Positions 7,651-37,564 of a stretch of DNA of 64,000 nt are shown in pieces. The DNA is taken from contig NW_026934771.1 in assembly GCF_032062105.1 (NCBI RefSeq), positions 310,001 to 374,000 on the forward strand, read 5' to 3'. Numbering within the stretch: position 1 is the stretch's first letter; the number at the start of each line of letters is the position of its first letter. Made by a program: the position numbers and the translations under genes. Source of the stretch: Saccostrea cucullata (Eukaryota). Under the pieces are notes generated by a model that saw only the letters and a list, made by a program, of their open reading frames with translations, had not been told where the DNA came from and did not search any database.

Positions 7651-8111
7651 GGTGATGGTGCTCCTTGTTATCAGCCGTTCTCAGTGGGGATCAGGCAATC
7701 GGCCTATACCATTTAAACGCTTGTGTGACCTGGAATAATGGAACAGTCCAGGAGCCTTTTCACCCCTGTTTGAATGGTATAGCCCTTTGCTATATAAATG
7801 ACTGCAGAGGCAGTCTCGACCTCTCTCTCTCTCTCTCTCGGAAACCCACAGAAGAAGCAAGAATCTGAAAAGAAGATTAAAGGTAGTGTAGTGTGATGTG
7901 AATGTGTAAGGGAACGAATGTATATGGAACCGCTTGTAAGTGCGCATGTGTGACAGAGTTGTCGTCTGTTCGTCGGAGAGAAAACACATGGTTGACTGAT
8001 TGAGAATATTCTTTGGTATATTTGTGTTATATGTGCTCCAGATTAAACATATATGAAAATTACCTCGGTCGTCAGTTAGTTTAATCTTGCATAGGTTATA
8101 TAACACTTCAC

Positions 8112-8125
8112 TGGCGCTGCGAGCA
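8112..8125 (+). promoter_or_regulatory. Primer-binding site of Gypsy B (tRNA-Ser-like)
   Basis: TGGCGCTGCGAGCA lies 1 nt after the 5' LTR and resembles the complement of metazoan tRNA-Ser(CGA/TGA) 3' ends. Confidence 0.7.
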
Positions 8126-8636
8126 ATCGATTCTGCACGAAAATTACTGTGTATTGAATTTCGTTGATATTTTTCTCGTGGCGGGAATCTGTCAAAGTCC
8201 CACACGTGTATATATATAGTAATTCTTGAAAATTTACTGACAATTTGAATTAAGTTATGTGAAATTCTATTTATTCATTAAGTTATAATCATTACGATTA
8301 CAAAGTCTGGCAGTATTATATTTTTGTGCATTTTGTTGAAACAAAAGTTAAACACGTGGCGAGGCTAATCACCGGAAGATCAAGATGCACATGGTCGACC
8401 ACATGCAGGGCCTGGGAAGGGGCCGCGCCACGCGCCATATGCGCATTCTGCCGAAAAATGGCGCACTGTAATGATGGTGCGCTGCGCCATGCGGCGCATC
8501 CCCAAAAATAATGTAAAATGCGCACACGCATTATTTCTACCATGTGATTTTATCGAGATCGACGTTATCGGTAATCTTCATCAAAGTTAGATGGAATTGT
8601 CCGATGAGTACGGAATGATAGAATCGGAACGCCATT

Positions 8637-10761
8637 TTTAGGTCACCTGAGTTACTCAGGTGACCTATTGCTATCCGTTTTCGTCCGTCGTCGTGTGTCG
8701 TGTGTCGTGCGTCGTGCGTCGTGTGTTAACATTTGAACATTTTCAGCTTCTTCTCTGAAACCACTGAACCAATTTCAACCAAATTTGGTATACAGCATCT
8801 ATGGGTGAAGGGGAACAAAAATTGTGAATTTTATGGTCCCCGCCCCCCTGGGGCCTGAGGGGTGGGGCCAAAACCACTAAAATTAGTGCATTCTTTGAAA
8901 ATCTTCTTCTTTATTCCTGGACATCAAGCAGGCAAACTGTTGGCATGAATGTAATGAGCATTGAGTCCTCTACCAAAATTGTGAAATTCATGGCCCCAGG
9001 GTCAGGGGTTCTAATAGTGCTAGGGCGGGGCTATATAGATTATATAGTGAAAATGCATGATTTCTTTGAAAATCTTCTTCTCTGCTCCTGGGTATTAAAT
9101 AAACTAACCAAGCACATAGTTATGATGAGCAAGAGTGCCTCTACCAAAATTGTGAATTTTATGACCCCAGGGTCAGGGGTTCTGGTGTTAGGGCGGGGCT
9201 CTATTGGTTATATAGTGAAAATGCATTTATTCTTTGAAAATCTTCTTCTCTACTTCTGGGTATCTAATACACTAACTAAGTATATAGTTATAATGAGCAA
9301 GAGTGCATCTACCAAAATTGTGAATTTTATGACCCCAGGGTCAGGGGTTCAGGTGTTAGGGCGGGGCTCTATTGGTTATATAGTGAAAATGCATTTATTC
9401 TTTGAAAATCTTCTTCTCTACTTCTGGGTATTAAATGAACTTACCAAGCACAAAGTTATGATGAGCAAGAGTGCCTCTACCAAAATTGTGAATTTTATGA
9501 CCCCAGGGTCAGGGGTTCAGGTGTTAGGGCGGGGCTCTATGGGTTATATAGTGAAAATGCATTTATTCTTTGAAAATCTTCTTCTCTACTTCTGGGTTTT
9601 AAATGAACTTACCAAGCACATAGTTATGAGGAGCAAGAGTGCCTCTACCAAAATTGTGAATTTTATGACCCTAGGGTCAGGGGTTCTGGTGTTAGGGCGG
9701 GGCTCTATTGGTTATATAGTGAAAATACATGAATTCTTTGAAAATCTTCTTCTCTACTTCTGGGTATCAAATAAACTAACTAAGTATATAGTTATGATGA
9801 GCAAGAGTGCCTCTACCAAAATTGTGAATTTTATGACCCCAGGGTCAGGGGTTCTGGTGTTAGGGCGGGGCTCTATTGGTTATATAGTGAAAATGCATTT
9901 ATTCTTTGAAAATCTTCTTCTCTACTTCTGGGTATTAAATGAACTTACCAAGCACATAGTTATGATGAGCAAGAGTGCCTCTACCAAAATTGTGAATTTT
10001 ATGACCCCAGGGTCAGGGGTTCTGGTGTTAGGGCGGGGCTCTATGGGTTATATAGTGAAAATGCATTAATTCTTTGAAAATCTTCTTCTCTACTTCTGGG
10101 TATTAAATGAACTTACCAAGCACAAAGTTATGATGAGCAAGAGTGCCTCTACCAAAATTGTGAATTTTATGACCCCAGGGTCAGGGGTTCTGGTGTTAGG
10201 GCGGGGCTCTTTTGATCATATAGTGAAAATGCATTAATTCTTTGAACATCTTTCTTTTGCTCCTGGGTTTTATGCCAAAGATCCAAGTATATATATTTAT
10301 GATGAAGAAAGGTGCATCTAGCAAAATGGTTATTTTTTATGCCCCCCCCCCCGCTGGGTGGGGGGGGGGGGGGGGGGGGTACAAAGTCTGAAAATAAATT
10401 AATGCTTTGAAATCTGCTCTTTGGTATTAATCAACCATTTTATGATAAAATTTGCAAAATTTTGAAATATGTGGCCCCAGGATCAGTGGTTCCTTTGGGA
10501 TGAGGTGCACAACTGGTTATAAAGTGGAAGTGCATTTTCTCTTAATGTTACTCTCAGTCTGATCTTCCTCTGGGTATTAAGTAAATAGAGTAAACATGCC
10601 AAGTCTTTAACACTGTTTAATTATGATCAGTAATGGTGCCTCTTTCAAAATTGTGAATTGCGAATGTCATGGCCTCTGGTTTAAAACACGAACCAAATTT
10701 AATTGTTTGAAAGTTGTTGCACAATACTCAGGTGACCTATAAGGCCCGTGGGCCTCTTGTT
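8637..10761 (+). mobile_element. HINE (non-autonomous Helentron) carrying a 168-bp tandem satellite
   Basis: Left end ttttaggtcacctgagttactcaggtgaccta hairpin plus (cgt/cgtgt)n microsatellite, then ~8-9 tandem 168-bp units. Right end ctcaggtgaccta..aggcccgtgggcctcttgtt. Inserted in a T-run. Confidence 0.85.
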
Positions 10762-11118
10762 AAATACTGACATGCCGCCGGCAAAGAAAATGAAGATTTC
10801 ACTTCCACGTGGCCAAAAGACACTAACCTCCATGCAGTTTCCAACCGGCTTAAGTTCAGAAATAGAATCGAGTCCCGAGGAAGGAGATACAGCAAATGTA
10901 AGAGGTGAGAATGCTGATGCAGAAGTGAACAATGACGAGACCGTCGGAGACCAGTAAAAGTGCTGATAAACAAAAAAGAAAATTTCACTCATCGTGGCTG
11001 AAATTGTGGCCCTGGATGATTTACGAATCGGAAAAAATGTTTTGCACTATATGTAAAGAAAGGGGTAAAGACAATATATTTACGCAGGGTTGTGGCACAT
11101 TTAAAACTTCGTCATTAA

Positions 11119-11275
11119 ATCGCGTGCAATTAAAATTACGCAGACAAAAAACATATGGCTGAACATATGGCAGAAAGCAGGTCATGTAATTAGGTCGGTT
11201 TTCACCGAAGTCCTAGGTAATACTACAGCTAGGACTTCGGTTAAATCAATAATCGCACAACAAAAGTTACGCGGT
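11119..11275. mobile_element. 157-bp MITE in the hAT transposase
   Basis: Short TIRs atcgcgt/acgcggt, TAA (or TTAA) duplication, and internal hairpin ccgaagtcctag...ctaggacttcgg. Removal restores ...TSSLRHENSQDH. Confidence 0.75.
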
Positions 11276-13316
11276 TAAGACATGAAAATTCTCAAGATCA
11301 CAGGGATAGTATACAAGCACAGTCACTTAGTAAAGAGATGAACGTAGCTGTAGCTAAAATGATGACAGACCACGATGCAGCTTTAATAAAGGCTATAAAG
11401 ACTGTACATTGGCTTGCCATTGAGAATTTACCACTGTCAAAATTTGAAAGTATGATGGATTTTCTTAAAGATGTAGGCACACCAAATCTCCATTTTTTAC
11501 AAGTTGGAAATCGAATTGATTATCAGTCGTACTATTCAGCTAATGAATTTCTACATGCAATTAGTGATGTGATAGAAGAGAAAACAACTGAAAACCTACA
11601 GAAGTCACCATTTGTAACAATATATGCAGATGAAAGTACAGACATTTGTAACAAGAAAAGAATGACAATGACAGCTAGGATAATTAACCCAGAAAATTCT
11701 AGAGCACAAACTGTATATTTGAGAGACATTGAGTATGAGAGTGGGACAGGGGAGGGATTGACTTCAGAGATAATTAAGGAGTTGAATTTACGACACATAT
11801 CGATATCAAAGGTCCTTGGTTTCGGATCAGATGGTGCATCAGTCATGACGGGGTTAGATAAAGGTGTAAGTGGAAGACTGAAAGAATTGAATCCTCACAT
11901 TTTAAACATTCATTGCATGGCACATAGATTAGCACTTTGCACTGCACAAGCAGCAGAAGGAATTCCTGCTCTGAAAAGATACCAAGAGTTTATGACAAAA
12001 TTATTCTATTATTTTAAAGTCTCAGCAGATAGGGAGAAGGAAGTTCACAAAGTTCAAGCTCTTTTGGATCATCCCATGCTGAAGTATAAAGAAATTCATG
12101 CTGTGCGCTGGCTCTCATTCTACGATGGATTGGAAACCATTTACAAAACTCTTGATCCTCTTTTAACTTACTAGTGCACAACCGAGAAGCCAAAAAAGAC
12201 CCTAAAGCCAAAGGACTCCTAAAGCAAATGGCCACAATGCAATTCATCTATATCACCTATCTAATGATGGATGTTCTTCCATGAGATTGTGTCTAACCTT
12301 TCAAAAGGATGACTTAGATGTTGCTCGTGCTAAGGTACATAATAAAATATTGTGCATTTTAATTTACAATATATACATGTATTACAAAAAAGCACAAATT
12401 GTAATTCTGTAAAATTTTATTTATAAATCCAACTTTTTACAAGACGTTTTAAAATTAGATTTCAGTTGACTCCTGTCTGAGTGAGCTGGAGGCTTTCAAA
12501 GAAGGAAAAACTTTCCACACTACATTTGTTGAGCAGTTTGCTTCAGATATTACAGAAGTTGATGACCATCCTGAATTCAAAGGACACAGAATTCAAAAAG
12601 TTCCTGGTGCAAATTTCCAGTCACTTAAGAGCCAATTTATAAATAGTTTGGTCTCAAATATTAGGAAAAGGTAATTTATTTGGTTATTCCACTCGAGTCA
12701 TAGACAATTACATACTGGTACACACTACTGTAATAGAAATAATTTTTTCTTCATTCTGTACATCAACAATAGACTAGACAGATAAGTTAGTCTTAAGAAA
12801 ACTTTCATTAATTGATTAATGTTATTGTTATTAAACAATACAAATTATTTGAAAAAAAATATCTTTGACTTCAGATTTCCACAGAAGTCCCTGATGGATG
12901 CCTTCTATGTTCTGTCCATGCGAGCCATTAATTTCAGTGATGTGGAGACATATGGTATTGAAGAAATAAATGAACTTCTTGACTACTACGGAACTTCAAA
13001 AGTAACTATTTCATTCTTCAAAATAATTTTATTTGTCAATAAAAAGATAATTTCAAATCAGTGGAAAAAAAATATGTTCATATAAATATACTTACTTCTA
13101 TTTAAATTGCAGTGTCACAAATCTGCCATCTCACAGCCGGTATTATGTGCAGAGAAAGTTAGAAATCAGTGGATGTTGGCCAAGCAGATTGTCAAGTCTG
13201 CAAGATACCCAACTGACCAGATGCAAGAATTATGGGAACTACTCACAAAACACCATAAAGAAGAATTGAATGAACTGATCAAGCTAGCACAGATTGCACT
13301 CACTTTGCCCCTGCAC

Positions 13317-14875
13317 ACTGCAAGTGAAGATCTGAGAGTCCTACCAGGTGTGGGTCAGGTCATAGCTGACCGTATATGGGAACTAAGAAAGCAAGGCCCC
13401 ATTGACTTGGAAACATTTGTGGGTATACCTAAACTAAGGGTCACACCAGAACTAGTTGAATGTGTAGATTTTCTACCACCATTGTGTATAGATCATAGCT
13501 ACGCCAAGCCCACAAGTGATGGTATGGAGGATTACTTCACAAAGTTCCAGGATTACGAGGATCATGGTGAAGTAAATACAGAGTATAAGACGAGTGACTG
13601 CACAGCAAAGCTGTCTACTCACCCTCAACACACAGCAACCCCTTTGTCGGAACCTAGGAGAACGCCATCATCAGGTGAAAGTAGCTGTGCATCGCACGCA
13701 TACAAGAGTGAATCGACACCGACGGGTACTCAGAAGCATTCTATACCTAACAATATGCGACCACATGGCAGTCACACTAATTACAGATCAGAAGAACAGG
13801 AAAATTCTTTGCATGACAATGAAGTGCAACGTCCAATTCCAGACCATATCAGGTTCCAGACACCTATGGTACAATGACACACATTGCCTTCACCTCAGTT
13901 GTCGCCAACTTTCGTACGACGTCGACCAACAGTCTCTGAGAGCCAGGGGCAACATGAATCAAAACCTGTGTATCTGCCCAAAGCCTTGCGGTATGATGGG
14001 ACCTCTAACTGGGAAGCCTTCTTTGTGAAATTCAGCAGATATGCAGATGTATCTCACTGGACAGCTACAGAGCGCAAAGATCAGTTATGTTGGTGTCTCG
14101 ATGGAAAAGCCAGCGAGTTTTACACCAGTATTGTGAACAGAGACTATGGCATAGACTATTTTGAGTTAGTTCGAAAACTAGAAAAGTGTTTTAACTTTGT
14201 GGATTTACCAGAAACTCTTCAAGTCCAGTTTATGGGAGCCCATCAGAACACAGGAGAAAAACTTGAAGATTGGGCTGACAGATTACTTTCCCTAGCAATG
14301 AAAGCTTTTCGTGACCTGCCAGAAGAACACGTATACTCGCAAGCTGTATGGAGATTCTGTCAGGGATGTTGTGATAAAGAGGCTGGTCAAAATGCTGCAA
14401 TGTCAAAACCAAAATCTATTGAGGACGCCATAGACAAGATCAAGTGGTACCAGCATACTACCAAAGCCATTTATGGTAAACCCATCAGATGCCGAGAATT
14501 TTCTGAAGATTCCGAGCACGAGATTGATTCTGTGAGAACAATTAACGCAGCAGTGAAAAGCGACAAGAATTTTTCTTCATCAGCACATCAATCAGATCAG
14601 CTAAAGTCTATGGAGGAACAAATCAAGATTCTTGTGGACAACATGCAAATGCTTCAAACTAAATTAAGCAGCATGGAGAATAAACAGAAAAGAAAACCAC
14701 AAAATACGGAGACCCGTACATGCTACAATTGTGACAAACCAGGGCACCTAGCAAGAGATTGCAGAAGCCTAAGAAGTTGAGGGCCCAGAATCAAAGCAGA
14801 AGTCAGAATACAAACGGGAGTTCACAGTCTGAGACGAGACCTTTAAACGAGGGTGGGCCGGGTCAACAGGCGTAA
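13317..14875 (+). pseudogene. Gypsy gag (N-terminal HhH motif, capsid-like region, CCHC knuckle), 5' truncated
   Basis: EDLRVLPGVGQVIADRI, YDGTSNWEAF and CYNCDKPGHLARDC. In-frame TGA at 13875 and an inferred 1-bp loss near 14765. Confidence 0.85.
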
Positions 14876-17800
14876 ATCCGACCCGAAATACTACAGAGCG
14901 CCTCAAGAAAAATTGTGCTTCAGAAGAAACGAGCCCTAAATCAATAAGACATACATCAAGGAAACGCAAGAAGCAAAGAAGACATAGAAGGAAAACATCA
15001 AATAGAAATCGTACTTCCTATTCTGAAGATAAAAGCGCAGATGTAGATAAAACAATGACCATCCTACAGTTGGGATCAGCTTCTATGTTGAGATTAAATG
15101 TAAAAGTGAACTCTACAGACATTACTGCAGTAATAGATACAGGAGCAGAAGTCACTATCATCTCAGATCGGGTGTATGAAAAGATGCAGATTAAACCACC
15201 TATTAAGAAACGCACTGTCATGCATGGTGCAGGGCGTGATATGAAAATGGATACATTCATCATTGGTCCAGTTGACATCAAGATAGGATCCAAAACATAC
15301 CCATCTGAAATATACGTAGCACCTATGGATGATGACATGCTCCTAGGCTTAGACTTCATGCAGGAAAACAATGTTATACTCGATTGCAGTAAGAACCAGT
15401 TCTCCATTAACTCTGAAGTTTTGCAGATGTCATATGGAAAGAGTCGGGAAGCTCCAACAGTTGCCAAAGTAACAGTGCCTGGTAAAACTGTAATTCCACC
15501 TAATTCAGCCATACATGTAAATGGTAAACTATCTCGACACATTGAGGGAAGCTACATTATAGAGCCTGAGGAAGATATTCCAGTTATGATGCCACGATGT
15601 GTATACTCTAAACAAAACTCACCTAGGCTATGTTTAGTAAATGCCAGTGACCGATACTTTACCATTCGAAAAGGCACGATAGTAGGAGAAGCGTTGTCAG
15701 CCGACCCAATGACTGTTGTTTCAGCATCGAAACCCCAAAGTGAACAACCATTACCGGAAATTCCAGAGCATTTGAGTTCCCTTTTCCAGAAATCTGCAAA
15801 CCTAGACCAAAGTCAGAGCAAATTATTGATGAATCCACTCAAGGAATATAAAGATATTTTTGCTGAGAATGATTTTGATCTTGGCACCTTTACAGAGATA
15901 GAACATTCGATAAACACTGGCTCTGCATCACCGATTAAGCAGAGGATGAAAATCATTTACGCACAATGCTGGACGCAGGTATAATTGAACCGTCAACCTC
16001 AGAGTGGGCGTCGCCGCCCGTACATGTGCGGAAAAGAGACGGCAAAGTTAGATGGTGTATAGATTACAGGAAACTTAACTCTGTAACAAAGAAAGATGTT
16101 TACCCTTTACCTCTAATTGAAGAGTGTATTGACACATTGTCTGGAAATGAGTGGTTTTCCAAACTTGATGCCAACTCAGCGTACTATCAGATAAAAGTCA
16201 AAGATTCGGACAAGGACAAAACAGCCTTCATAACAAAGTATGGGTTATTCCAGTTTACCCGGATGAGTTTTGGTCTTTGCAACGCTCCATCGACTTATGA
16301 TAGAGTCATGAACTTAGTCTTGCGCGGACTGACATGGAACATTGTGTTAGCCTTTCTGGATGACATCCTTGTGATGGGAAAATCATTTGAGGATCATCTG
16401 CGCAACCTGAAAATAGTCTTTGATAGATTTCGTCATTACGGTCTAAAGCTAAAAGCCAGGAAATGCCTTCTATTCCAGAAAGAAGTAGAATTCCTAGGCC
16501 AGAAAGTAAACAAAACAGGATTAGCTATAGGGGACGAGCACGTCGAAGCTGTGAAAGATTGGAAAACCCCAGCAACAACAAAAGAAATTGAGAAATTTCT
16601 GGGTTTTGCAAATTACCACAGAACATTCATCAAGGACTATGCCAAGATGGCAGCACCTCTTAATCGGCTTACAGGCAAGAAGCCGTATGTGTGGGGACCA
16701 GAGCAGCAAGACGCCTTTGACAGTTTGAAGTTGTCACTTATAACTACTCCAGTTCTAGCATTACCAAACTCTAAGGATTTATTCATCCTAGACACAGACG
16801 CGTCAGACTTTGCAATAGGTGCAGAACTCGTGCAGGTGCTGGAGGGTAAAGAGCGTGTTATTGCGTATGGCAGTTTTAGTCTCACCCCAGAGCAACAGCG
16901 CTATTGTACAACAAGAAAGGAGTTACTAGCAATTGTCCGTTTCACCAAACAATTCAATCATTATCTGTTGGGCAGAGAATTTGTGGTTAGGACTGACCAT
17001 AGCAGCCTTACCTGGCTCCTTAATTTTAAAAACCCACAAGGTCAGTTAGCCAGATGGCTGGGGTAAATTCACTGAAGATGTGGATGATGTCGTTCCCCTG
17101 GGTAGGACAGTAGAAACAACAGAATTACATGCTGCTTTATCCTGGTTATTTAACGAGAAGGGATACGATGACATGGAACTCGTTTGTCAAGAGTCAAGCT
17201 CAGACTTGCATCATACATCGTTGGAAATTTCCTTTACAGACCCAGATAAACCTACTCTCATTAGTATGGAGGAACAACAGTGTAATCAAGTCCGCACTGC
17301 TTCCCGTACTAGTGGGTTTGCAGGCATTGAATATTCACCCGAAGTCCTGAAAGAATTCCAGGAAAAAGATTCTGATCTTAGATTGATACTGCCTTATCTG
17401 GTGTCAAATGAAACCCCATCTGAAGATGAAATCTTTATAAGCAGCAAGGCAGCAAAGAAATACTGGGTTAATAAAGAGACGTTTTTCATTGATGGTGAGG
17501 GAATACTACGCAACAACCCAAAGAATGGTGGAGAACCAAGACTTGTGGTGCCAAAAACCTTGGTAGATGAAGTACTAGGACTATGTCATGACTTACCAGT
17601 TATGGGACATCAAGGTGTGTCAAGAACATATTTACGAGTGAAAGGGAAGTTCTATTGGTATAACATGAATCAGTCAACCAGAGATTTTGTAAGGACATGT
17701 GACATTTGCAGTAAACACAAAAAGGCCAACAGAAAAGCAAAGTGTCCCATGACAAAATACCAAGCTGGAGTACCAATGGAGAGAGTTCACCTTGATTTCT

Positions 17801-18640
17801 TGGGTCCTTTACCCGAATCTACCTCAGGCAACTCAAACATTTTAGTCATGGTGGACCAATTTACCAAATGGGTGGAATGTGTCCCATTACCATCACAAAC
17901 AGCTGAAGTCACAGCTAGAGCTGCTGTAAATGAATTTTTTGCTTGATTTGGTTTTCCCTTCAACATATTCACTGACCAGGGGAGAAACTTTGAGAGCAGG
18001 CTCTTCAAGACTATTTGTGATATACTTCAGATTCATAAGAGTAAGCATACCTGCTGACCTAGTTTTTCGACCACCTGAAACCATTGAATCCAGTGACCAT
18101 GAGGATTATGTGTCAAGATTACAAGAGTCTATAAGAACAGCTCATGAAGTGGCCAGAGATGCACTGAAAGCACATCAAGTCCATATGAAGAGAGATTATG
18201 ATGTTAAGATTCAAACCAGAGAATATGCTGTTGGTGATCTCATCTATGTGTTGGATAGCGCCAAAACTAAAGGTCGTTCTAAGAAACTAGATCCACCTTG
18301 GAAGGGACCTGGCATTGTTATTCAGAAAGTATCATCATATATCTACAAGGTCAAACTTCGAAATTCCGTGTTTATTACTAACCACGACAGATTGAAAAAG
18401 TGTTGTGACAGGAAAATACCTGACTGGCTACGCCAATGCCAGCATCGTCTGCGAAATGGAGAAAATATTCTCCAGTTGCAATCAATTGACACTTTTTGTA
18501 TATGTGACAAACCTGACGACGGACGTCTTATGATTCAGTGCGACTCCTGTGATACTTGGTATCACGGAGCATGTGTCGCAGTCACTGAAGAGTTAGCAGA
18601 TACCTTGAAGACGTATATATGTCCAAGGTGTCAAGTATAA
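14842..18640 (+). pseudogene. Gypsy pol: protease, RT, RNase H, integrase, C-terminal PHD finger
   Basis: IDTGA, WCIDYRKLN, FLDD, DTDASD, TDH, HHCC zinc motif, HLDFLGP and TDQGRNFE, ending in a Cys4-His-Cys3 PHD. Deletions at ~15950, ~17065 and ~18040, and a stop at 17944. Confidence 0.93.
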
Positions 18641-18696
18641 TATGTCTTGTACCTTTTACTAATGTTATGTTTGTGTTCAATTTTATTTTAGGTACA

Positions 18697-20184
18697 ATGG
18701 AAGAATCTGACAGAGAGTACATCACGGCAGATGAAGCCGACATCTCTGATTCTGATGAGTACCTCACAGATAATCACTGCCATCAAGAAACAGACGAAGA
18801 GTCGTCTGATGTTGAAGAGGGCCTACTACCCTTTAAGCGGTGACGGACATGTGATGTGCCGACACAGGAACTTTCACCAGATTCGAAACCTGCCAAGGAA
18901 CCGACCCAGGAGCTGGGACTGTCCACACAAAGACAGATACCTACTGAACGGGATAAACGATCAGCATGCCCTGTTCCTGGATGTCATTACCGCTCTAAGC
19001 ACCTCAAGCATCATGCTTGGGAGTATCATCTCCCTAGGTTGTTCTGGGATCGCCCCTGGAATTCTTTGGCAGCGCTGCCGGAATATCACACTTTGAGAGC
19101 ATCGTGTTTAAATGTGTTAGGTCAGTACGTCTTGGGACCAACTGCGACAATCGACGAGTTAGTGGTGCACGTCAATGAAGAAATCCCACTGCCCCGAGAA
19201 TACCCAATTATGGGTAGGACCTTTGTCCAGATGGGTCAGCTGACCCGTACGATGCGGTGGCCCTTCGTGAACCGCTTCACCATGAGTCCAGTAAACAGCC
19301 CAGTGGTATTACTTCACTGGAGAATCCTTCTGTCCCTAGTTTGTAACTTATTGGAGGAAAAGAGACGTGCGTTCAAGAGTTGGGGCAGAAAGGAGCTCGC
19401 TGAGCTCGAAGAAAGGGTCAGAACCAGAAGGTCACATGGAGTCGGAGCACCACAGGAGACCCACAGACGTGTTGAAGAACATGATGAGATCGAGTGGGAA
19501 GTTCTGGATGAATGCGGTAGTGAAGAAGATGTAGCAGATAAAGACAGCGATGGAGATAGCAGTAGTGAGAAAGAGGACACCCCTTATGAAGTTATTGTCC
19601 TCCAAGCAGGTTACGAGGAAGACTTCCCAAGCCTAGGAAAACGGAAAATGGGAAGTAGTATTACTCTATTAAAAGGATCGATGAACATCATAGTTGACAC
19701 GGGAAATCCTTCAGATAGACAATACTTACTGTCCCGCCTCAGTGAACAGGGTTTGGCAGTTGAGGACATAGAATGCTGTGTGACGACTCATGGTCACTTG
19801 GACCACATGGGAAACTTGAATGTTTTCCCTAATGCCTACCATGTTGCAGCTTCTCAGATGTGTGTTGGTGATCTACACCACTCCCATGACTTCAAGTTGT
19901 CATTCTGGATCAATGATCAAATAGAAGTCGTACACACACCAGGACATACCTCAGAAGACATCTCCATACTAGTCCATGCATCCCAGATGGGAACAGTAGC
20001 TGTCGTTGGTGATCTTTTCCACAGCATGGAAGACTTGGAAGATGCATCAATTTGGAGGAGGTTCAGTAGGAATGTGAACGACCAGGACAAGAATAGGAGA
20101 AAGATCCTTGATGTAGCAGAATACATTGTCCCCGGCCATGGTCCGATGTTTCGAGTTCCGGGACGAGAGCGAAACATTATATAA
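18697..20184 (+). CDS. Gypsy accessory ORF3: acidic N-terminus, C2H2-like/unknown domain and MBLAC1-like metallo-beta-lactamase-fold hydrolase (one in-frame stop at 18841)
   Basis: ATG 18697 follows a polypyrimidine-AG and is in frame with ORF 18856-20184. Motifs VDTG, THGHLDHMGN, TPGHT, VVGDLF and IVPGHG. It lies between integrase and the PPT. Confidence 0.85.
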
Positions 20185-21420
20185 ACTGTGCTGTTCTATA
20201 TTGTAATAGATAATTGAATCCTGATATTGTTCATTTTAGTTATAGTTGTAAGTATATGCAAGAGATGCGGCAGAATTCATTATGTTTAATAAGTGTTAGA
20301 ATTTCTGATGATTCTTTTGTATCATTCGTCATTCCTAAATTGTCATATAATTGTGCTATATTGATTTCATGTCGAAATTTTTTTTAGCCTGTGTATGTGT
20401 TATTATTGCATGTAGTTTGAGTGATTGGATGGAAGTGTAAGTCTCATTATCAATCATTTTTTTATAGTTATATTCATATTGTTGATATAATGGTAATATT
20501 TATCATTGAGATCTCATAGTGAATTTAGAAATAATTTGTATCTGGATTCAGCATGGTTTATTGTATGTGAACTCAGGTAAAATGATTTAGAGACTGTATG
20601 TTGTGAACATTATCTGAATTGTATGTAATACCACTGCTGATATTCAGTTTATCTGCTTCACTTTATCATAGAATCTTTAAGGATCACTGTTTATTTTCAC
20701 AATCATATAAGTGTTTGGTTGATATTTACATAAGGTACAGGAGTACCTTCTTTTTTCAAAAGGGAGGGGAGTGTAGTGTGATGTGAATGTGTAAGGGAAC
20801 GAATGTATATGGAACCGCTTGTAAGTGCGCATGTGTGACAGAGTTGTCGTCTGTTCGTCGGAGAGAAAACACATGGTTGACTGATTGAGAATATTCTTTG
20901 GTATATTTGTAAGTGTTATATGTGCTCCAGATTAAACATATATGAAAATTACCTCGGTCGTCAGTTAGTTTAATCTTGCATAGGTTATATAACACTTCAG
21001 TAGTAATACAAATTAGAAGTATTTAAAGGGAAAAGGAAAGATAAGGCTAGGGTACAGAGCACCGGTCTGTATTTAGCCAAGGAATTGAATTGAAGCACAA
21101 GGTGTAGTAATCCTGAGTAAGGGTGAGGCACCGAGTGCTCAGTTCAATAGAAACTTGGTTACGGAACCAGGTGCAAGGAACCCAGTCACAGTACCCAGTT
21201 ACAAAGAACTAACCTCGGCTTGTAGATCCCGGTGTTTAAATAAAAAAAAAATAATAAACAAGGACAAGTATCCCATGAAAATAATAAATAATCATACTTG
21301 TACATAATTTTAATTCCCAGTATTAATTATAGGCTCAGATAGAGCCAGAGGAAAAGTTTATATATATTGGACCCTGTATCTCCTGAAAACGGACCCTAAA
21401 TTTGGTTACACGTTACATTT

Positions 21421-21438
21421 TGGTGGCAGCGGTGGGAT
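21421..21438 (+). promoter_or_regulatory. Primer-binding site of element A (tRNA-Leu)
   Basis: TGGTGGCAGCGGTGGGAT, complement of the tRNA-Leu(AAG/TAG) 3' end, 3 nt after the LTR end at 21417. Confidence 0.85.
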
Positions 21439-21528
21439 GCCTAAATGGCACTCTGATTATCAGTTTGATTATACTGTATAGTAAATGTTCTTTGCTAAGT
21501 AAGCAATGTTTTTTTTAAATTTCAGATC

Positions 21529-22167
21529 ATGTCATTGACGAAAGTTACCCCCCGGAAACCCGGCGTTCTATGTCCCATTTGCCTTTCCCGACTCTCTTCA
21601 CAAGAGGAATGGAAAGAGCATCTTCTAGCATGTGCTACTGATGACATAAATAAACGAAAATTTGAGTGTAACCAGTGTGACAAAGCATTTGCTAAACATT
21701 TCCTTCTAAGGAGACACCAGAAGAGGTTACATTCAACTACTGGTTTGCAAGGTGGAGAAAAAAATGAACCATCGAACTCCAAATCCGTTGATAACCATGA
21801 TGATGATTCTGACTGGCAAGAAGACCCAGGAGATCTTATTTATGAGACAGGCCTTGAAGTTGGTAGAACCATCAGGAAGAAAACATCGCCCAGTCTCCCT
21901 GGAGTCAAGCGCAAAGCAGACGAACTTGTAGAAAAGATGCCTGACCAATCTGCAGACAAAGATTCAAGCATGGTGGATGATGGTAAGGATCATGAGGCGC
22001 CCATGGTTTTACATCACTGCCCCTGCTGTAGGGAACATGTTACTAGGTTGAATGCCAGCACTCAGACGGATACCAGTCGTCACCAGAAGACCGTCAGAGT
22101 TGTAAGAAAGTACCAAAAGGATGGTGAATGTGTGGAGAGCGTTGAGGAAGACATTTGGAATGACTAA
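21529..22167 (+). CDS. 212-aa zinc-finger protein, the only substantial sense ORF of LTR element A
   Basis: CPIC-x12-H-x3-C and CNQC-x12-H-x4-H fingers, followed by acidic/basic segments and a CPCC motif. Uninterrupted, and preceded by a tttcag acceptor-like site. Confidence 0.75.
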   Translation: MSLTKVTPRKPGVLCPICLSRLSSQEEWKEHLLACATDDINKRKFECNQCDKAFAKHFLLRRHQKRLHSTTGLQGGEKNEPSNSKSVDNHDDDSDWQEDPGDLIYETGLEVGRTIRKKTSPSLPGVKRKADELVEKMPDQSADKDSSMVDDGKDHEAPMVLHHCPCCREHVTRLNASTQTDTSRHQKTVRVVRKYQKDGECVESVEEDIWND

Positions 22168-22356
22168 TTATAGGGATGTACTTTGAAAAAGAAACAATGT
22201 ACATAAGTCTATTGTTGTAAATACTTGAATAATTGTGTAACTGGGTATAAGAAAGGAATTCTTAACCTCGTTTTGTCGATCTTTTCATTGTCTAAAAAAA
22301 AAAAAAAAACATAACTAATAAACATGTGGGACGCAAGTGTACAGAGGCATGGGTAG

Positions 22357-22973
22357 TGTAACGAGTAATGAATAAGGCAGTCGGCCTATACCATTCAAAC
22401 GCTTGTGTGACGTGGAATAATGGAACAGTCCAGGAGCCTGTTCACCCCTGTTTGAATGGTATAGCCCTTTGCTATATAAACGACTGCAGAGGCAGTCTCG
22501 ACCTCTCTCTCTCTCGGAAACCCACAGAAGAAGCAAGAATCTGAATAGAAGATTAAGGGTAGTAATACAAATTAGAAGTATTTAAAGGGAAAAGGAAAGA
22601 TAAGGCTAGGGTACAGATCACCGGTCTGTATTTAGCCAAGGAATTGAATTGAAGCACAAGGTGTAGTAATCCTGAGTAAGGGTGAGGCACCGAGTGCTCA
22701 ATTCAATAGAAACTTGGTTACGGAACCAGGTGCAAGGAACCCAGTCACAGTACCCGGTTACAAAGAACTAACCTCAGCTTGTAGATCCCAGTGTTAAAAT
22801 AAAAAAATAATAAACAAGGACAAGTATCCCACGAAAATAATAAATAATCATACTTGTACATAATTTTAATTCCCAGTATTAATTATAGGCTCAGATAGAG
22901 CCAGAGGAAAAGTTTATATATATTGGACCCTGTATCTCCTGAAAACGGACCCTAAATTTGGTTACACGTTACA
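22357..22973 (+). repeat. Intact 3' LTR of element A with TATA box and (CT)n
   Basis: TGTAAC...GTTACA termini, gctatataaa at ~22471, and AATAAA motifs at ~22800-22845. Confidence 0.9.
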
Positions 22974-23860: not shown

Positions 23861-26800
23861 TCATTGGTTTGCTTTTTCACAGAATGAAATAACGGACCAA
23901 TTTCCATCTACCATCCATTTCTTGTCCTGTTTTTCTACCGTTTCTTTCTGTCCTGGGCCCAATCCTGCAATCAGGTCAGCTTTACAGGCCCTGAGGGCAC
24001 ACAAAGGAGCTGGGTGAAAACCCCTCAGACTGACCTCAAATGGTGTGGTTGGATTCCAGTTCAAATCCCCAAGGAGTTTCCTGTAATTCAAGTCCCCTTT
24101 GAAAAATATTATTCTTGTGTCTTTAAAACTTTCATACAGACTAGATGCTTGAGTTTTCATTTCAGCGAAATTGTAAGGAGTTGTCCAGAAATCTTCACAA
24201 GTGAGCCTCCAAGAACCGTTTTCTAACCTCTGACACCACTGTCTACCAAAGTGAGCCATGGCTGGCCTTGGAGATATACAAAGAGAATCGAGCGTCCACT
24301 TAAAATCTCTTTCCGTGACATCAGAGACGAACCAAGGCATTGCTTTCCCATGCATTCGAATACAATCCGCCCATCCACATGCTAACAAAATCTCGGCTAA
24401 ACAGAGATCAGTAATGAGTTCAAATCCTGCATTGTCCAGAACTATGTCAATGTTTCTACTTCTAGAGCTGGATCTGAGACAGTGTAAGACTTGCTTCGTG
24501 TCATTAATTAGAATATTGGGCTCTAGATGGTGGAGTTGATCTAGAATGGATTCTGTCTGGGAATTTTCCTGGGTGGCTGATATAGAGAGATCACAACGAT
24601 TTCCCCATAATGCAATCTACAAAATACATGTAAATATTTTTATTATAATTATATTACTCACAAAAATAGTACCTGGACTGGTATAAAATGAAACATAGGT
24701 AATCAAAGATATCATGGAAGCTAATTGCCCTCGACGAATGTTATCTCTAGCATATATAAGTAATGCAAATCTCACATCATATTTTCTTAAATATTTAGTA
24801 TTTTACTCCCAATAACAATATTGGCAATACGCAAATTGTGTTTAACCCCTTACATGGCATATACACATTTCTATGCGTGTAGCGTGAAAAACATGTATAG
24901 TGTAAACAAATATTCATATACTGTTAATACTGCAGATATCAAGGACTTCAAGTTCTTTTGCATTCAAAAAAATTGTTCCAAAAACTTAAACCTGGTCTAT
25001 GACCTGCAAAAATATCTGTAACAGATCCAGCATCCGAAGCAAGTCTGATAGTGTCTTCCTTAGATGCATTATCCATGCAAATTTGGTTTCAGAACCAGTG
25101 AAGGGCTTACAGTTACTTGGGATTGAAAATGATAATTCATGTAACACTTTCCGAAGCTAAAAGTCTGGTAGTGTACATCCCTAGATACATCATCCATGCA
25201 AGTTTGGTTTAGCTAGGGCTTATAGTTACTTCAAAAAAAATGAAAATGTAGGTCAGCAAATTACTTTTCCAGCTTAATTCCGAAGCAAGTCTGATATGTC
25301 CATCCCTAGATTTTGCATCAACCATGCAAAAGTTTTCCAGGTTTATAGATAGTTCCTTGGGAATAGACCTGCTGCGATACATGTAAAACTTTAACCTGGT
25401 CACTCAACTGGAAAATGTACCCTCCCTCTCTGATCCAGCATCCGAAGCAAGATTTGTAGTGTCCTTTCCTAGATGCATCATCCAAGTTTGGTCCAGGTTG
25501 GGCTTATAGTTCCTTGGGAATAGACCTGCTCCAAAAACTTTAACCTGGTCACTCATCTGGAAAATGTTGCAAGAAAACACATCCGAAGCAAGTCTGGTAC
25601 TGTAAAACAGATGCATCATCCATGCAAGTTTGGTCCGGGGTACAATTTATAATTCCTTGGGAATGGACATTTCTGCTCCAAAAACATTTTTAACCTGCAA
25701 AACCTGAAAAACTTTTTTTGGTCACTCATCTAGAAAATGTAGGTCAGATCCAGCATCCGAAGCAAGTCTGGTAGTGTACATCCCTAAATGCATCATCCAT
25801 GCAAGTTTGGTCCCGGTAGGGCTTATAGTTCCTTGGGAATGGACCTGCTCCAAAAACTTTAACCTGCTCCAAAAACTTTAACCTCGTCACTCATCTAGAA
25901 AATGTAGGTCAGATCCAGCATCCGTAGCAGCACCTCCTGACTAGAGATCTGGTAGCTGTACATCCCTAGCATTGCATCATCCATGCAAATCATTAAAATA
26001 GGTAGGGTTTATAGTGCGACCGTTGGGGCGAAGCGGTTATTTACAATCAAAACCTTTACACCTGGGACGCCACTGCCTATCGCCAACACCGGGGGTATAG
26101 CATAAGCTCATTTCGACTTCGTCGAGGTGAGCTAAAAACAGAGAGATGAATGTTCCCTTACAGAAATTTTGAATTAGAATATATCATGGCAAGAGATAAT
26201 TGCCCATTCAATAATTTTTATCTCTATGGTGCATATATAAGTCATAGCATCAATTAACTACACGTTGTTTGCATTTTTTTCACTGTAAATAACTATTTCT
26301 ATGTATTTTACTGTTTGTGACCGCAAAGGATTATTGGCAATACATAAAATTTTTTTATTCCATTACTAATAATAACAGAGATTTTACCCAAATTTCCTTT
26401 ATTGCAATGAAAACTTTGCTCATGCAATAAAATCTGTATAATATACATGTATCCCATTAATAGAGATAAAAATTAAAATGCGTATCATAATAATTCTTAA
26501 GCATTCAAAAAAATTTAATAAAAAAGAAAAAAAGAAGTATTTGACCTGCAAAAATTCTGTAACATATTCATCTTTATCCTCCTCTGTCGCTGTTACTATT
26601 TTCTCTGTAATGCCCTGTAGGTAATGTAACAAAACCTCAATGGCTTCTTCAGAACCGGTGAAGGCCTTCATTTTCTGCTCCTCAAAAGGATCCAATTCAT
26701 GTAACACTTTACTGATGACATAAAAATAAAACAATTTTCAGATAATTATTCTCTTGAAAACATTAGATTACTAATATTGCGGAGGACAACATTATTGCAG

Positions 26801-37067: not shown

Positions 37068-37564
37068 GTGGGGTGGGGGGGGGGGGGGGGGGGGGGGCAA
37101 CCGGACTCTCAAATGAACATTTACTATAGTACAAAGCTATGTCTGGGACCCCCCCCCCTCCACTTCTTGCTGCTTGCCTGATTTTGGAATTAATTTAATT
37201 ATATATTTTCTTGTCAATCTAATTATTTGACACGCAATATTTAATTATAAAACGTTAGGAGAAACAAGAATGTCCCGTCTAGTCAGGGACCCATTATTGA
37301 TCGTTACTGTTTAGAAGACATTCTCGCTATCATTGGACTATTATTCTGTGTGATTGATGATAGTACATTTAAAGTACCCCTATTTTCTTTACCTATTGAT
37401 TTAAGTAAGGAATTTAATTTAGGTTTATACTGACGATTTAGCACTGTGTTTAAACTGCGGCTATAAAATCGTCACCATTTAAATGCGATCTAACTTGTTG
37501 CACAGGACTATTTGTAAAACAGGTCCATATTTGTTTATGTGTGCTATAATTGCAGGAACCAGTG

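What the first reader, a model, noticed from the sequence alone, without database searches (positions are those of the whole stretch)
18697..20184. Gypsy retrotransposon with a third ORF encoding an MBLAC1-like metallo-beta-lactamase-fold (putative ribonuclease) fusion protein
Seen: between integrase and the PPT/3' LTR (the env position) is a 495-codon frame broken only by one TGA in a cgg-tga-cgg context, probably CpG decay. It has an acidic N-terminus, a CPVPGC-x7-KHH-x4-H zinc-finger-like motif, a ~150-aa unknown domain, an acidic linker and a complete MBL domain (~19585-20170). All metal ligands are present (HGHLDH, TPGH, GD, PGH). It is intronless and follows an acceptor-like ttttattttag. 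Known: the motif pattern matches animal MBLAC1/SWIP-10, and human MBLAC1 is reported as an endoribonuclease in replication-dependent histone pre-mRNA 3' processing. I know of no described LTR lineage carrying this enzyme. Inference: the element captured a host nuclease as an accessory gene expressed from a spliced subgenomic RNA. It could process element RNA, counter small-RNA defence, or alter histone supply.
Basis: partly seen in the sequence, partly recalled or inferred. Interest (0 to 1): 0.92.

Follow-up and report, generated by a model that had tools for sequence, protein, structure and literature searches.

The report
Mollusc Gypsy element with nuclease ORF3
A decayed mollusc Gypsy retrotransposon carries, after its integrase, a third gene that joins a conserved zinc-finger module to an MBLAC1-type metal hydrolase; relatives join the same module to a TatD nuclease, which points to an apparently undescribed, swappable nuclease accessory gene in this group of elements.

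Summary
Window 7887-20999 is a Ty3/Gypsy element with 98%-identical LTRs, a 4-bp target duplication, a PBS and a PPT. ORF3 (18697-20184) lies between an integrase that ends in a PHD finger and the PPT. It has one in-frame stop. Its C-terminal 202 residues are an MBLAC1-type domain with all eight metal-site residues.

ORF3 is not private to this copy. The same pol-ORF3-PPT layout occurs in a complete Magallana gigas element and in several public contigs.

- The N-terminal module (a CCHH finger plus a basic helical domain, absent from Pfam and PDB) defines a mollusc family of at least 339 cluster representatives. In 60 of 92 long members scanned it is fused to a TatD nuclease, and none of the 92 has an MBL domain.
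- Sister Gypsy elements, one with all three ORFs open, carry the TatD version as ORF3. One lineage carries the module alone.
- A contig whose integrase is 87-97% identical in DNA to the window's has an ORF3 only 45-69% identical, with five metal-site residues replaced. This indicates that ORF3 was exchanged as a cassette.

Splicing and nuclease activity remain inferred. I rate this a new variant of a known kind.

The parts
7883..7886 (+). Target-site duplication, left copy (GTAG)
   Evidence: Same 4 bp at 21000-21003. The unoccupied paralogous site at about 22540-22575 has it once.
7887..8110 (+). 5' LTR (TG..CA)
   Evidence: 98% identical to 20772-20999. Its first 9 nt are the same in the LTRs of L001, L003 and L012.
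8112..8129 (+). Primer-binding-site-like sequence beginning TGG, one base after the LTR
   Evidence: The 20 nt after the LTR (8111-8130) are 100% identical to the matching place in the M. gigas element L001.
8130..13106 (+). Unusually long leader between PBS and gag. It includes a 168-bp x 7.7 tandem array (8954-10252) and an unknown 278-codon ORF (11338-12174).
   Evidence: TRF and repeats. The M. gigas relative has only about 440 bp here. No Pfam family of note.
13107..14780 (+). gag (PNMA-like region and CCHC knuckle); broken by one in-frame stop
   Evidence: Pfam PNMA and zf-CCHC. The upstream half is 41% identical to L001. The intact relative L013 has a single 602-codon gag.
15055..18640 (+). 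pol in the order PR, RT, RNase H, IN (H2C2 and core), PHD. Broken: at least 3 frame changes, 1-2 in-frame stops and about 64 integrase residues missing, compared with uninterrupted relatives.
   Evidence: Pfam. Counts against L001, L002 and L012 ORFs. Frameshifts could partly be assembly errors.
18497..18631 (+). PHD finger at the C-terminus of integrase
   Evidence: Pfam PHD at E 1.5e-11. Found by Pfam in L001, L002, L003, L012 and L013. In L004, L005, L006 and L008 the same IN-PHD region is matched by tblastn.
18641..18696 (+). pol-ORF3 spacer with a T-rich tract ending in AG (18681-18691), 5 nt before the ATG; putative 3' splice site
   Evidence: Sequence. A pyrimidine tract plus YAG lies in the spacer in all five lineages, immediately before the putative ATG in the window, L002, L001/L006 and L012. 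L005 has the tract but no ATG right after it. Function inferred.
18697..20184 (+). ORF3 (495 codons plus stop); broken by one in-frame stop, no frameshift
   Evidence: Homologues P0001, P0002, P0003, P0079 and P0080.
18952..19437 (+). N-module of ORF3: CCHH zinc finger (18967-19029) plus a basic helical domain
   Evidence: AlphaFold pLDDT 70-90 for most of it. A profile of it finds 339 cluster representatives at E<=1e-3. The CCHH residues are at least 90% conserved over 82 sequences. No Pfam, PDB or fold match.
19438..19575 (+). Acidic, disordered linker
   Evidence: pLDDT below 50. 18 D/E in 45 residues.
19576..20181 (+). MBLAC1-type metallo-beta-lactamase-fold domain with all metal-site residues present
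20185..20757 (+). 3' untranslated region
   Evidence: No ORF. Diverged from L003 except next to the PPT.
20758..20771 (+). Polypurine tract
   Evidence: Abuts the 3' LTR. The region is about 90% identical in L001 and L003.
20772..20999 (+). 3' LTR
21000..21003 (+). Target-site duplication, right copy (GTAG)
21000..22973 (+). Neighbour: a repeat-bounded unit of about 2 kb into whose left terminal repeat (7690-7886 plus 21000-21417) the Gypsy element inserted. The right repeat is 22372-22973. The internal 212-codon ORF (21529-22167) has a C2H2 finger.

Best explanation
Shown:
- The region is ORF3 of a decayed copy of a mollusc Ty3/Gypsy lineage. Its integrase ends in a PHD finger and it carries a third, modular accessory gene.
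- The gene has a constant N-module (an acidic tail, a CCHH zinc finger and a basic helical domain) followed, after an acidic linker, by a metal-dependent hydrolase domain that differs between lineages. The domain is a TatD nuclease in most relatives and an MBLAC1-type domain in the sub-lineage the window belongs to. One lineage has no such domain.
- The whole ORF3-to-PPT segment has been exchanged between lineages.

Inferred:
- The MBLAC1-type domain entered once, from an animal (probably mollusc) MBLAC1 gene, into an ORF3 that already had this layout.
- The protein is made from a subgenomic mRNA spliced onto the conserved AG just upstream of the ATG.
- The basic zinc-finger module brings the protein to nucleic acid or to a nucleoprotein partner. 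The attached enzyme then cuts or trims single-stranded RNA or DNA ends that arise during the element's own RNA processing or reverse transcription, or that the host would otherwise sense or use against it.

The window copy itself is dead: gag, pol and ORF3 are all broken.
For: Element boundaries and ORF3 position.

The same layout elsewhere:
- M. gigas L001 is a complete element with 97% identical LTRs, a 4-bp duplication, an identical PBS, RT 84% identical to the window's, and ORF3 with N-module plus MBL.
- L002-L004 have IN-PHD followed 66 nt later by an open 467-codon ORF3. L003 reaches the PPT and the LTR start.
- L006-L010 are broken copies with N-module plus MBL.

MBLAC1 identity and preservation: (48 of 51 host-conserved columns kept).

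Single origin: the element MBL clade has 86% bootstrap support.

N-module family:
- 339 cluster representatives at E<=1e-3 and 148 at E<=1e-10.
- 60 of 92 long members have TatD_DNase and none has Lactamase_B.
- 22 columns are invariant across MBL-type, module-only, TatD-type and stand-alone members.

TatD version as Gypsy ORF3:
- L012 has IN-PHD, then N-module plus TatD, then a PPT and the same LTR start as the window.
- L013 has gag of 602, pol of 1443 (with PHD) and ORF3 of 626 codons, all open.

Cassette exchange: window versus L002 is 87-97% identical in DNA through integrase and 45-69% from the ORF3 start onward. The downstream sequence resembles L003 again only at the PPT.

Putative acceptor conserved in five lineages, immediately before the ATG in four.

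The N-module helical part has pI 10.0, and the protein has no signal peptide (acidic N-terminus). The most hydrophobic 19-residue stretch is borderline (1.63 against a threshold of about 1.6) and falls in a conserved helix of the N-module.

Precedents:
- Human MBLAC1 is a histone pre-mRNA 3'-end endonuclease (PMC6303110).
- A DEDDy exonuclease serves as ORF3 in bdelloid rotifer Gypsy elements (PMC5408684).
Against: - No RNA evidence for splicing or expression was available.
- No activity data exist for any member.
- A lineage with near-identical integrase (L002 type) has replaced five of eight metal-site residues and keeps only 39 of 51 host-conserved columns. Its ORF3 is nonetheless open in several near-identical copies.
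- The L005 type ends after the N-module and exists as at least 7 open 311-codon variants. The enzyme domain is therefore dispensable for some lineages.
- dN/dS on single uninterrupted blocks of two M. gigas-type copies gave about 0.5, 0.13 and 0.56 from a few substitutions each, which is inconclusive.
- The C. elegans MBLAC1 orthologue is linked to copper homeostasis rather than RNA (PMC11441482), so nuclease is not the only possible chemistry.
- The element+mollusc grouping has only 52% bootstrap support in a simple NJ tree.
Confidence: 0.6

Rival explanations
1. The N-module is the working part of ORF3, for example a nucleic-acid- or chromatin-binding regulator or chaperone. The attached hydrolase domain would be an optional, often non-catalytic appendage (a scaffold or pseudoenzyme), so the MBLAC1-type domain contributes little or nothing enzymatic.
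For: - The N-module is the only part shared by all versions.
- The L005 type has no enzyme domain and is present as several open near-identical copies.
- The L002 type has lost five metal-site residues but stays open.
Against: - The window and M. gigas-type copies keep all eight metal-site residues, and 48 and 45 of 51 host-conserved columns, despite about 45-50% overall divergence from every host sequence and from each other.
- The module is joined to a nuclease-family domain in at least 60 of 92 long relatives, and the swap partner is again a nucleic-acid hydrolase family.
Confidence: 0.22
2. This element lineage captured a host MBLAC1 gene outright as a new accessory gene, and the protein acts, like human MBLAC1, on replication-dependent histone pre-mRNA and so alters histone supply.
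For: - Best sequence and fold match to human MBLAC1.
- The element MBL clade sits next to mollusc MBLAC1.
- MBLAC1 has a reported role in histone mRNA 3' processing (PMC6303110).
Against: - The ORF3 scaffold predates the MBL domain and normally carries TatD. This argues for a generic nuclease role rather than a histone-specific one.
- Nothing in the sequence speaks to substrate.
- The donor lineage has only 52% support.
Confidence: 0.1
3. ORF3 is not part of the element. It would be a host gene or retrocopy that happens to lie inside the element, or the product of a misassembled LTR pair.
For: - M. gigas annotation names related pieces as host 'MBLAC1(-like)' proteins.
- Stand-alone N-module plus TatD genes exist without pol nearby.
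Against: - ORF3 lies inside LTR, duplication, PBS and PPT boundaries in two independent complete elements (window and L001).
- It directly follows IN-PHD in nine further contigs (L002-L006, L008, L012, L013).
- The unoccupied paralogous target site confirms a clean insertion.
Confidence: 0.02

Closest known systems
Human MBLAC1 (PDB 4V0H), a histone pre-mRNA 3'-end endonuclease (PMC6303110); animal MBLAC1/SWIP-10 family
   Same: - Same fold: model against 4v0h gives TM 0.82 and E 1e-20.
- Same metal-site residues.
- 36% identity in the structural alignment.
- 48 of 51 family-conserved columns kept.
   Different: - Here it is the C-terminal domain of a 495-codon retrotransposon ORF, behind a zinc-finger/helical module.
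- It forms its own clade apart from host genes.
- Substrate and activity are unknown.
Bdelloid rotifer Gypsy elements (Juno, Vesta) with enzymatic ORF3: DEDDy exonuclease or GDSL esterase (PMC5408684)
   Same: - A Gypsy element with a non-envelope third ORF after pol that encodes a hydrolase or nuclease of a family acting on RNA or ssDNA 3' ends.
- ORF3 types are shared and exchanged between elements.
- Some versions lack catalytic residues.
   Different: - Different enzyme families (MBLAC1-type and TatD, not DEDDy or GDSL).
- Different host phylum.
- Here a common N-module is kept while the enzyme domain is swapped.
TatD-family nucleases (Pfam PF01026)
   Same: The usual C-terminal partner of the same N-module, including as ORF3 of sister Gypsy elements.
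   Different: The window's ORF3 has no TatD domain. An MBL-fold domain occupies that place.
Envelope-carrying Gypsy elements (errantiviruses; PMC13524379)
   Same: A third ORF between pol and the 3' LTR, with a probable splice acceptor before it.
   Different: - No signal peptide; the N-terminus is acidic.
- The most hydrophobic 19-residue stretch is borderline (1.63 against a threshold of about 1.6).
- No envelope-family hit in Pfam and no viral glycoprotein fold match.
Chromoviruses (Gypsy elements with a chromodomain after integrase)
   Same: A chromatin-reader-type domain fused to the integrase C-terminus.
   Different: The domain is a PHD finger, not a chromodomain. A PHD domain in a retrotransposon has a precedent in CR1-like non-LTR elements (Kapitonov and Jurka 2003, as cited in PMC5408684).
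Orchid Ty3/Gypsy elements with a captured m6A RNA demethylase domain (PMC9289625, abstract only)
   Same: A Gypsy lineage that fixed an extra host-type enzyme domain acting on nucleic acid.
   Different: A plant host and a different enzyme. I read only the abstract.

Membership tests
Ty3/Gypsy LTR retrotransposon | Paired LTRs ending TG..CA, flanked by a short target-site duplication | tested here: met
   LTRs 7887-8110 and 20772-20999 are 98% identical. GTAG is duplicated. An unoccupied paralogous site is present.
Ty3/Gypsy LTR retrotransposon | PBS next to the 5' LTR and a polypurine tract next to the 3' LTR | tested here: met
   A TGG-initiated 18-mer at 8112-8129, identical in the M. gigas element. 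Purine tract at 20758-20771. The primer tRNA was not identified.
Ty3/Gypsy LTR retrotransposon | gag with a CCHC knuckle; pol in the order PR-RT-RNase H-IN | tested here: met
   Pfam hits in that order. The intact relative L013 has the same order in one ORF.
Ty3/Gypsy LTR retrotransposon | Placement of the RT in a named Gypsy clade (GyDB/Repbase) | not tested
   No reference set of named animal Gypsy elements is offered by the tools. I did not fetch such elements by accession.
MBLAC1 subfamily of the MBL fold | [quoted passage not shown] | tested here: met
   AlphaFold model with MBL part at pLDDT mostly 85-97. Foldseek to 4v0h gives TM 0.82 and E 1e-20.
MBLAC1 subfamily of the MBL fold | Metal ligands: Asp of motif 1, HxHxDH, His, Asp, His | tested here: met
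   All eight present in the window copy and in M. gigas P0002. Five replaced in the L002 type.
MBLAC1 subfamily of the MBL fold | Closer to MBLAC1 than to other MBL subfamilies | tested here: met
   PDB search: 4v0h at 6e-30 against 2.6e-9 for the next hit. The named animal hits of the domain search are annotated MBLAC1 or unnamed. A few bacterial MAG proteins of the same family score equally well.
MBLAC1 subfamily of the MBL fold | Orthology with the host MBLAC1 gene | tested here: not met
   The element domains form a separate clade (86%), outside a mollusc host clade (78%). It is a derived paralogue carried by the element, not the host gene.
MBLAC1 subfamily of the MBL fold | Endoribonuclease activity on histone pre-mRNA | not testable with these tools
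   Known for the human enzyme only (PMC6303110).
Envelope-carrying Gypsy elements (errantivirus-like) | ORF3 encodes a membrane fusion glycoprotein with a signal peptide and a transmembrane anchor | tested here: not met
   - The N-terminus is acidic.
- The most hydrophobic 19-residue window scores 1.63, at the usual threshold, and falls in a conserved helix of the N-module.
- No envelope family in Pfam.
- The viral fold library returns only MBL hydrolases.
Chromoviruses | Chromodomain at the integrase C-terminus | tested here: not met
   A PHD finger is there instead.
Gypsy elements with an enzymatic ORF3 (bdelloid Juno/Vesta type) | A third ORF after pol encoding a hydrolase or nuclease domain rather than an envelope protein | tested here: met
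   PMC5408684.
Gypsy elements with an enzymatic ORF3 (bdelloid Juno/Vesta type) | ORF3 homologous to DEDDy exonuclease or GDSL esterase | tested here: not met
   Pfam finds only Lactamase_B here and TatD_DNase in relatives.
Mollusc N-module plus nuclease proteins (family defined here) | CCHH finger (C-x4-C-x9-H-x4-H) followed by the conserved helical domain | tested here: met
   Profile search. Ligands at least 90% conserved in 82 sequences. 22 invariant columns over six divergent members.
Mollusc N-module plus nuclease proteins (family defined here) | C-terminal TatD domain (the majority architecture) | tested here: not met
   The window ORF3 has an MBL domain in that place. None of the 92 long relatives scanned has Lactamase_B.

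The most novel reading that the evidence does not exclude
Mollusc Gypsy elements of this clade carry a dedicated, exchangeable nuclease cassette: a nucleic-acid-targeting N-module plus TatD, an MBLAC1-type domain, or nothing. Its job would be to remove nucleic-acid species that expose the element to the host, such as abortive reverse-transcription products or small-RNA precursors. The stand-alone N-module plus TatD genes of oysters, mussels and abalone would be host-domesticated descendants, or the source, of that cassette. Bdelloid DEDDy ORF3s would then be a convergent solution to the same problem.
Probability: 0.15. Interest if true: 0.85.

Novelty: new variant of a known kind. Interest (0 to 1): 0.66.

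Why it matters
LTR retrotransposons are usually described as gag-pol, with or without env. Enzymatic third ORFs are known from very few lineages.

Here a whole mollusc clade combines three features:
- an integrase ending in a PHD finger;
- a conserved domain that Pfam and PDB do not contain;
- an interchangeable metal-dependent nuclease.

Independent recruitment of three different families that act on nucleic-acid ends (DEDDy in rotifers, TatD and MBLAC1-type here) suggests a recurring, still unnamed need in the Gypsy life cycle. That is a concrete question which expression and distribution data can address.

Two practical points follow:
- Several M. gigas proteins annotated as MBLAC1 or MBLAC1-like are transposon ORFs.
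- Molluscs have stand-alone genes built from the same module, which are candidates for domestication.

Tried and rejected
- **Other copies in the window.** tblastn of ORF3 against the window finds only itself.
- **N-module identity.** Nothing turned up:
  - Pfam down to E 5 gives no hit for the window or L002 N-modules, and only DUF6459 at E 0.09 for the L013 one.
  - A PDB profile search gives only chance BMP-2 hits at E>0.2.
  - The N-module-alone AlphaFold model was poor (pLDDT 53) and its fold search was empty.
  - The viral fold library returns only MBL hydrolases.
- **dN/dS.**
  - The intact families are too young: copies differ by only 1-5 residues.
  - The cross-lineage pairs are saturated.
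  - Single uninterrupted blocks of two M. gigas-type copies gave about 0.5, 0.13 and 0.56 from a few substitutions each, which is inconclusive. Blocks were not joined.
- **Spliced transcript among public contigs.** All contigs that reach upstream of ORF3 continue into pol, so they are unspliced RNA or genomic DNA. Run types are unknown.
- **Conserved splice donor.** The leaders of the window and L001 share only the PBS, so no donor was proposed.
- **Species of the window.** An exact-protein look-up gave NCBI assembly GCA_032062105.1, contig JAVVLV010016908.1. No paper mentions it, so no species name.
- **Literature.** I searched MBLAC1, Lactamase_B, metallo-beta-lactamase and TatD, each with retrotransposon, Gypsy or ORF3 terms. 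I also searched inside three mollusc or Gypsy survey papers. None describes this architecture. Repbase and GyDB entries themselves could not be searched.
  - ORF3 was never read through its stop as one query; its pieces were searched apart.
  - No named animal retroelement was fetched by accession, so there is no RT tree against named clades.
- One search printed gap-column counts per 150-nt bin, which roughly localises an indel in pol. In my working I also looked at the sequence context of the ORF3 stop.
  - One search was a wrong-frame coordinate error, corrected.
Full report
**1. What is in the window**

Direct repeats at 7887-8110 and 20772-20999 are 98% identical and run TG..CA. They are flanked by the 4-bp duplication GTAG. 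A second copy of the target repeat at about 22540-22575 shows the unoccupied site. One base after the 5' LTR comes an 18-nt sequence starting TGG. A 14-nt purine tract abuts the 3' LTR.

Pfam finds these domains between the LTRs, in order:
- gag (PNMA-like region and a CCHC knuckle);
- protease, reverse transcriptase and RNase H;
- integrase (H2C2 and core);
- a PHD finger at the very end of integrase.

This is a 13.1-kb Ty3/Gypsy element. It sits inside the terminal repeat of a small repeat-bounded unit.

The copy is dead:
- gag has one in-frame stop.
- pol, compared with uninterrupted relatives, has at least three frame changes, one or two in-frame stops and about 64 integrase residues missing.
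- ORF3 has one in-frame stop and no frameshift.

Some of the frameshifts could be assembly errors. I give no places for the breaks.

**2. The observation**

Section by section:
- An acidic tail.
- A zinc finger whose conserved spacing is C-x4-C-x9-H-x4-H.
- A basic helical domain.
- An acidic disordered linker.
- A 202-residue MBL-fold domain.

The MBL-fold domain is MBLAC1-type on four lines of evidence:
- Sequence: human MBLAC1 4v0h at E 6e-30, the next PDB hit at 2.6e-9.
- Fold: TM 0.82 and E 1e-20 against 4v0h.
- Its relatives in the large protein database are annotated MBLAC1 or belong to the same family.
- All eight metal-site residues are present, and it keeps 48 of the 51 columns conserved among 33 host-type and bacterial family members.

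**3. ORF3 belongs to the element family**

- A Magallana gigas chromosome locus (L001) holds a complete relative. It has 266-bp LTRs 97% identical, the 4-bp duplication ACTG, a PBS identical to the window's, RT 84% identical in protein, a PHD-ended integrase, then ORF3 with N-module plus MBL, then PPT and LTR.
- Public contigs L002-L004 hold integrase-PHD followed 66 nt later by an open 467-codon ORF3 (P0001). L003 continues to the PPT and the LTR start.
- L006-L010 are broken copies with the same two ORF3 domains.
- Several M. gigas proteins annotated MBLAC1 or MBLAC1-like (P0002, P0003, P0268, P0269) are pieces of such ORF3s. P0268 groups with P0002 at 100% bootstrap inside the element clade.

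**4. The N-module and its usual partner**

A profile of the N-module, searched against 1.84 billion cluster representatives, finds 339 proteins at E<=1e-3 and 148 at E<=1e-10. Pfam scans of 92 hits of at least 300 residues show TatD_DNase C-terminal to the module in 60. None has Lactamase_B. Every hit that carries an animal species name is a mollusc: Ostrea, Mytilus, Mercenaria, Haliotis and Magallana. Two hits carry bacterial or metagenome labels instead (see noticed in passing).

Context splits into two kinds:
- *Element-borne.* L012 has integrase-PHD, then 25 nt, then an open N-module plus TatD ORF. About 150 nt further on come a PPT and an LTR with the same first 9 nt as the window's. L013 is a 9.1-kb contig with gag (602 codons), pol (1443 codons, with PHD) and ORF3 (626 codons, N-module plus TatD), all open.
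- *Stand-alone.* These are single-exon genes with no pol within 10 kb. Examples are in Ostrea edulis (1102 residues, two N-modules plus TatD) and Haliotis cracherodii, and as tandem copies on an ENA contig.

A third ORF3 type (P0080 in L005) stops right after the N-module and is followed by AT-rich non-coding DNA. An alignment of MBL-type, module-only, TatD-type and stand-alone members has 22 invariant columns, 21 of them in the N-module. The enzyme domains begin after a variable linker. The N-module has no match in Pfam, in PDB sequences or by fold.

**5. History of the MBL domain**

In a neighbour-joining tree of the domain (202 columns, 200 bootstraps):
- The element sequences form one clade (86%).
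- Mollusc host MBLAC1s form another (78%).
- The two join in 52% of replicates.

This fits a single acquisition from an animal, probably mollusc, MBLAC1. The donor is not firmly placed.

ORF3 type tracks integrase relatedness to the window:

| Lineage | Integrase identity to window (protein) | ORF3 type |
|---|---|---|
| L002 type | 79-93% | N-module + MBL |
| M. gigas type | 72-79% | N-module + MBL |
| L005 | 69% | N-module only |
| L012, L013 | 50-56% | N-module + TatD |

I infer from this that the MBL version is derived.

**6. Cassette exchange**

Window and L002 are 87-97% identical in DNA across integrase. Identity falls to 45-69% from the ORF3 start onward. The 3' UTR is also unrelated, until the PPT. 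For comparison, window versus M. gigas shows about 26% protein divergence in integrase and about 46% in ORF3. Faster evolution alone therefore cannot turn 7% integrase divergence into about 50% ORF3 divergence. The pol and ORF3 segments of these two elements have different histories.

**7. Is catalysis kept?**

The evidence is mixed.
- For: the window and M. gigas types keep all metal-site residues and nearly all family-conserved columns.
- Against: the L002 type has replaced five of the eight and keeps 39 of 51. It still exists as four open variants (three of 467 codons, one of 466) that differ by 1-5 residues, so it is a young family. The module-only type is likewise young and open.
- dN/dS could not settle the matter.

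**8. Expression**

All five lineages keep a pyrimidine tract ending in YAG in the pol-ORF3 spacer. In four of them (window, L002, L001/L006, L012) it lies within a few bases of the putative ATG. In L005 no ATG follows it directly. This is what a 3' splice site for a subgenomic mRNA would look like. No RNA evidence was available, and no donor was sought by guesswork.

**9. Mechanism**

What is shown is the anatomy, the distribution and the exchange. The mechanism below is inferred:
- The basic zinc-finger module targets nucleic acid or a nucleoprotein.
- The attached enzyme cuts or trims RNA or ssDNA ends.
- The protein comes from a spliced mRNA.

Three things support a nuclease reading:
- the choice of swap partner (TatD);
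- the reported RNase activity of human MBLAC1 (PMC6303110);
- the DEDDy exonuclease ORF3 of bdelloid Gypsy elements (PMC5408684).

Three things weaken it:
- the two lineages that do without catalysis;
- the copper-homeostasis phenotype of the worm orthologue (PMC11441482);
- the absence of any activity data.

**10. Comparison and novelty**

The element is a Gypsy member by every structural test run here. It is not errantivirus-like, because ORF3 is not an envelope protein. It is not a chromovirus, because the integrase ends in a PHD finger rather than a chromodomain. The nearest known kind is the enzymatic-ORF3 Gypsy elements of bdelloid rotifers, from which it differs in enzyme family, host phylum and the constant N-module.

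I found no description of an MBLAC1-type or TatD ORF3 in LTR retrotransposons in the searchable literature. Repbase and GyDB entries could not be checked, so prior annotation there remains possible.

Verdict: real, not chance, a family-wide feature, and a new variant of a known kind.

**11. Limits and slips**

- Source: NCBI assembly GCA_032062105.1, contig JAVVLV010016908.1. The species name was not obtainable.
- The trees are simple NJ trees.
- Run types of the public contigs are unknown.
- ORF3 was searched in pieces, never through its stop.
- One search printed per-bin gap counts that roughly localise an indel in pol. In my working I also looked at the context of the ORF3 stop. Neither is repeated here.
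- One search was a wrong-frame coordinate error, corrected.

Noticed in passing
window 18497-18631; also L001, L002, L003, L012, L013: The integrase of this whole Gypsy clade ends in a PHD finger where chromoviruses have a chromodomain. This suggests chromatin-mark-directed integration.
   Followed up: partly
window 8130-13106: The leader between PBS and gag is about 4.9 kb, against about 440 bp in the M. gigas relative. It holds a 168-bp x 7.7 tandem array (8954-10252, 93% matches, spanned by a 374-codon frame) and an unknown 278-codon ORF (11338-12174). It could be a lineage-specific expansion or a nested insertion; undecided.
   Followed up: partly
window 7690-7886 + 21000-22973: The Gypsy element inserted into the left terminal repeat of a unit of about 2.2 kb bounded by roughly 600-bp direct repeats. 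Its 212-codon ORF (21529-22167) has a C2H2 finger and, as seen in the sequence, an A-run before the right repeat.
   Followed up: no
L011 (Ostrea edulis OX387706.1), L014 (Haliotis cracherodii), an ENA contig: Stand-alone, single-exon genes made of one or two N-modules plus a TatD domain, with no pol within 10 kb. On one contig they occur as tandem copies. They may be domesticated ORF3s or the source of the cassette.
   Followed up: partly
P0002, P0003, P0268, P0269 (Magallana gigas): Proteins annotated as MBLAC1 or MBLAC1-like host proteins are pieces of the retrotransposon ORF3. No oyster MBLAC1 of host type appeared among the 120 best of 160 hits.
   Followed up: partly
L013 (Logan SRR29726839, 9080 bp): A sister element with gag, pol and a TatD-type ORF3 all open, a PBS-like start and a PPT at its ends. 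I described it only.
   Followed up: partly
P0111 (NCBI MES9882213.1), P0148 (JGI): Proteins labelled as bacterial TatD, one from a Sedimenticola MAG, carry the mollusc N-module. This is probably host DNA binned into a symbiont or metagenome assembly.
   Followed up: no
P0126 and cluster (Mytilus edulis / M. galloprovincialis, 2000-2600 aa): Long gene models with the N-module in the middle and EF-hand (PDCD6-like) ends. They look like chimeric predictions that swallow an element ORF.
   Followed up: no
window 4965-5723 (-): A 253-codon ORF with a tyrosine-recombinase (Phage_integrase) domain. It is probably a DIRS- or Crypton-like element.
   Followed up: no
window 20-92 (-): ARAGORN calls a tRNA-like sequence with a four-base anticodon loop assignment (tRNA-???). 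It may be a SINE or a pseudogene.
   Followed up: no
window 23864-24388, 32318-32767, 37550-38278, 39813-40754, 58319-58870: Host-gene exons lie around the element: ARMT1-like, ChaC, DHHC palmitoyltransferase, an RRM protein and BIRC6. The element therefore sits in gene-bearing DNA.
   Followed up: no
P0245, P0247, P0255 (Nitrospirae MAGs): Bacterial MBL proteins of about 200 residues are 48-51% identical to the element's MBL domain, as close as mollusc MBLAC1. In the tree they sit outside the animal-mollusc group.
   Followed up: partly
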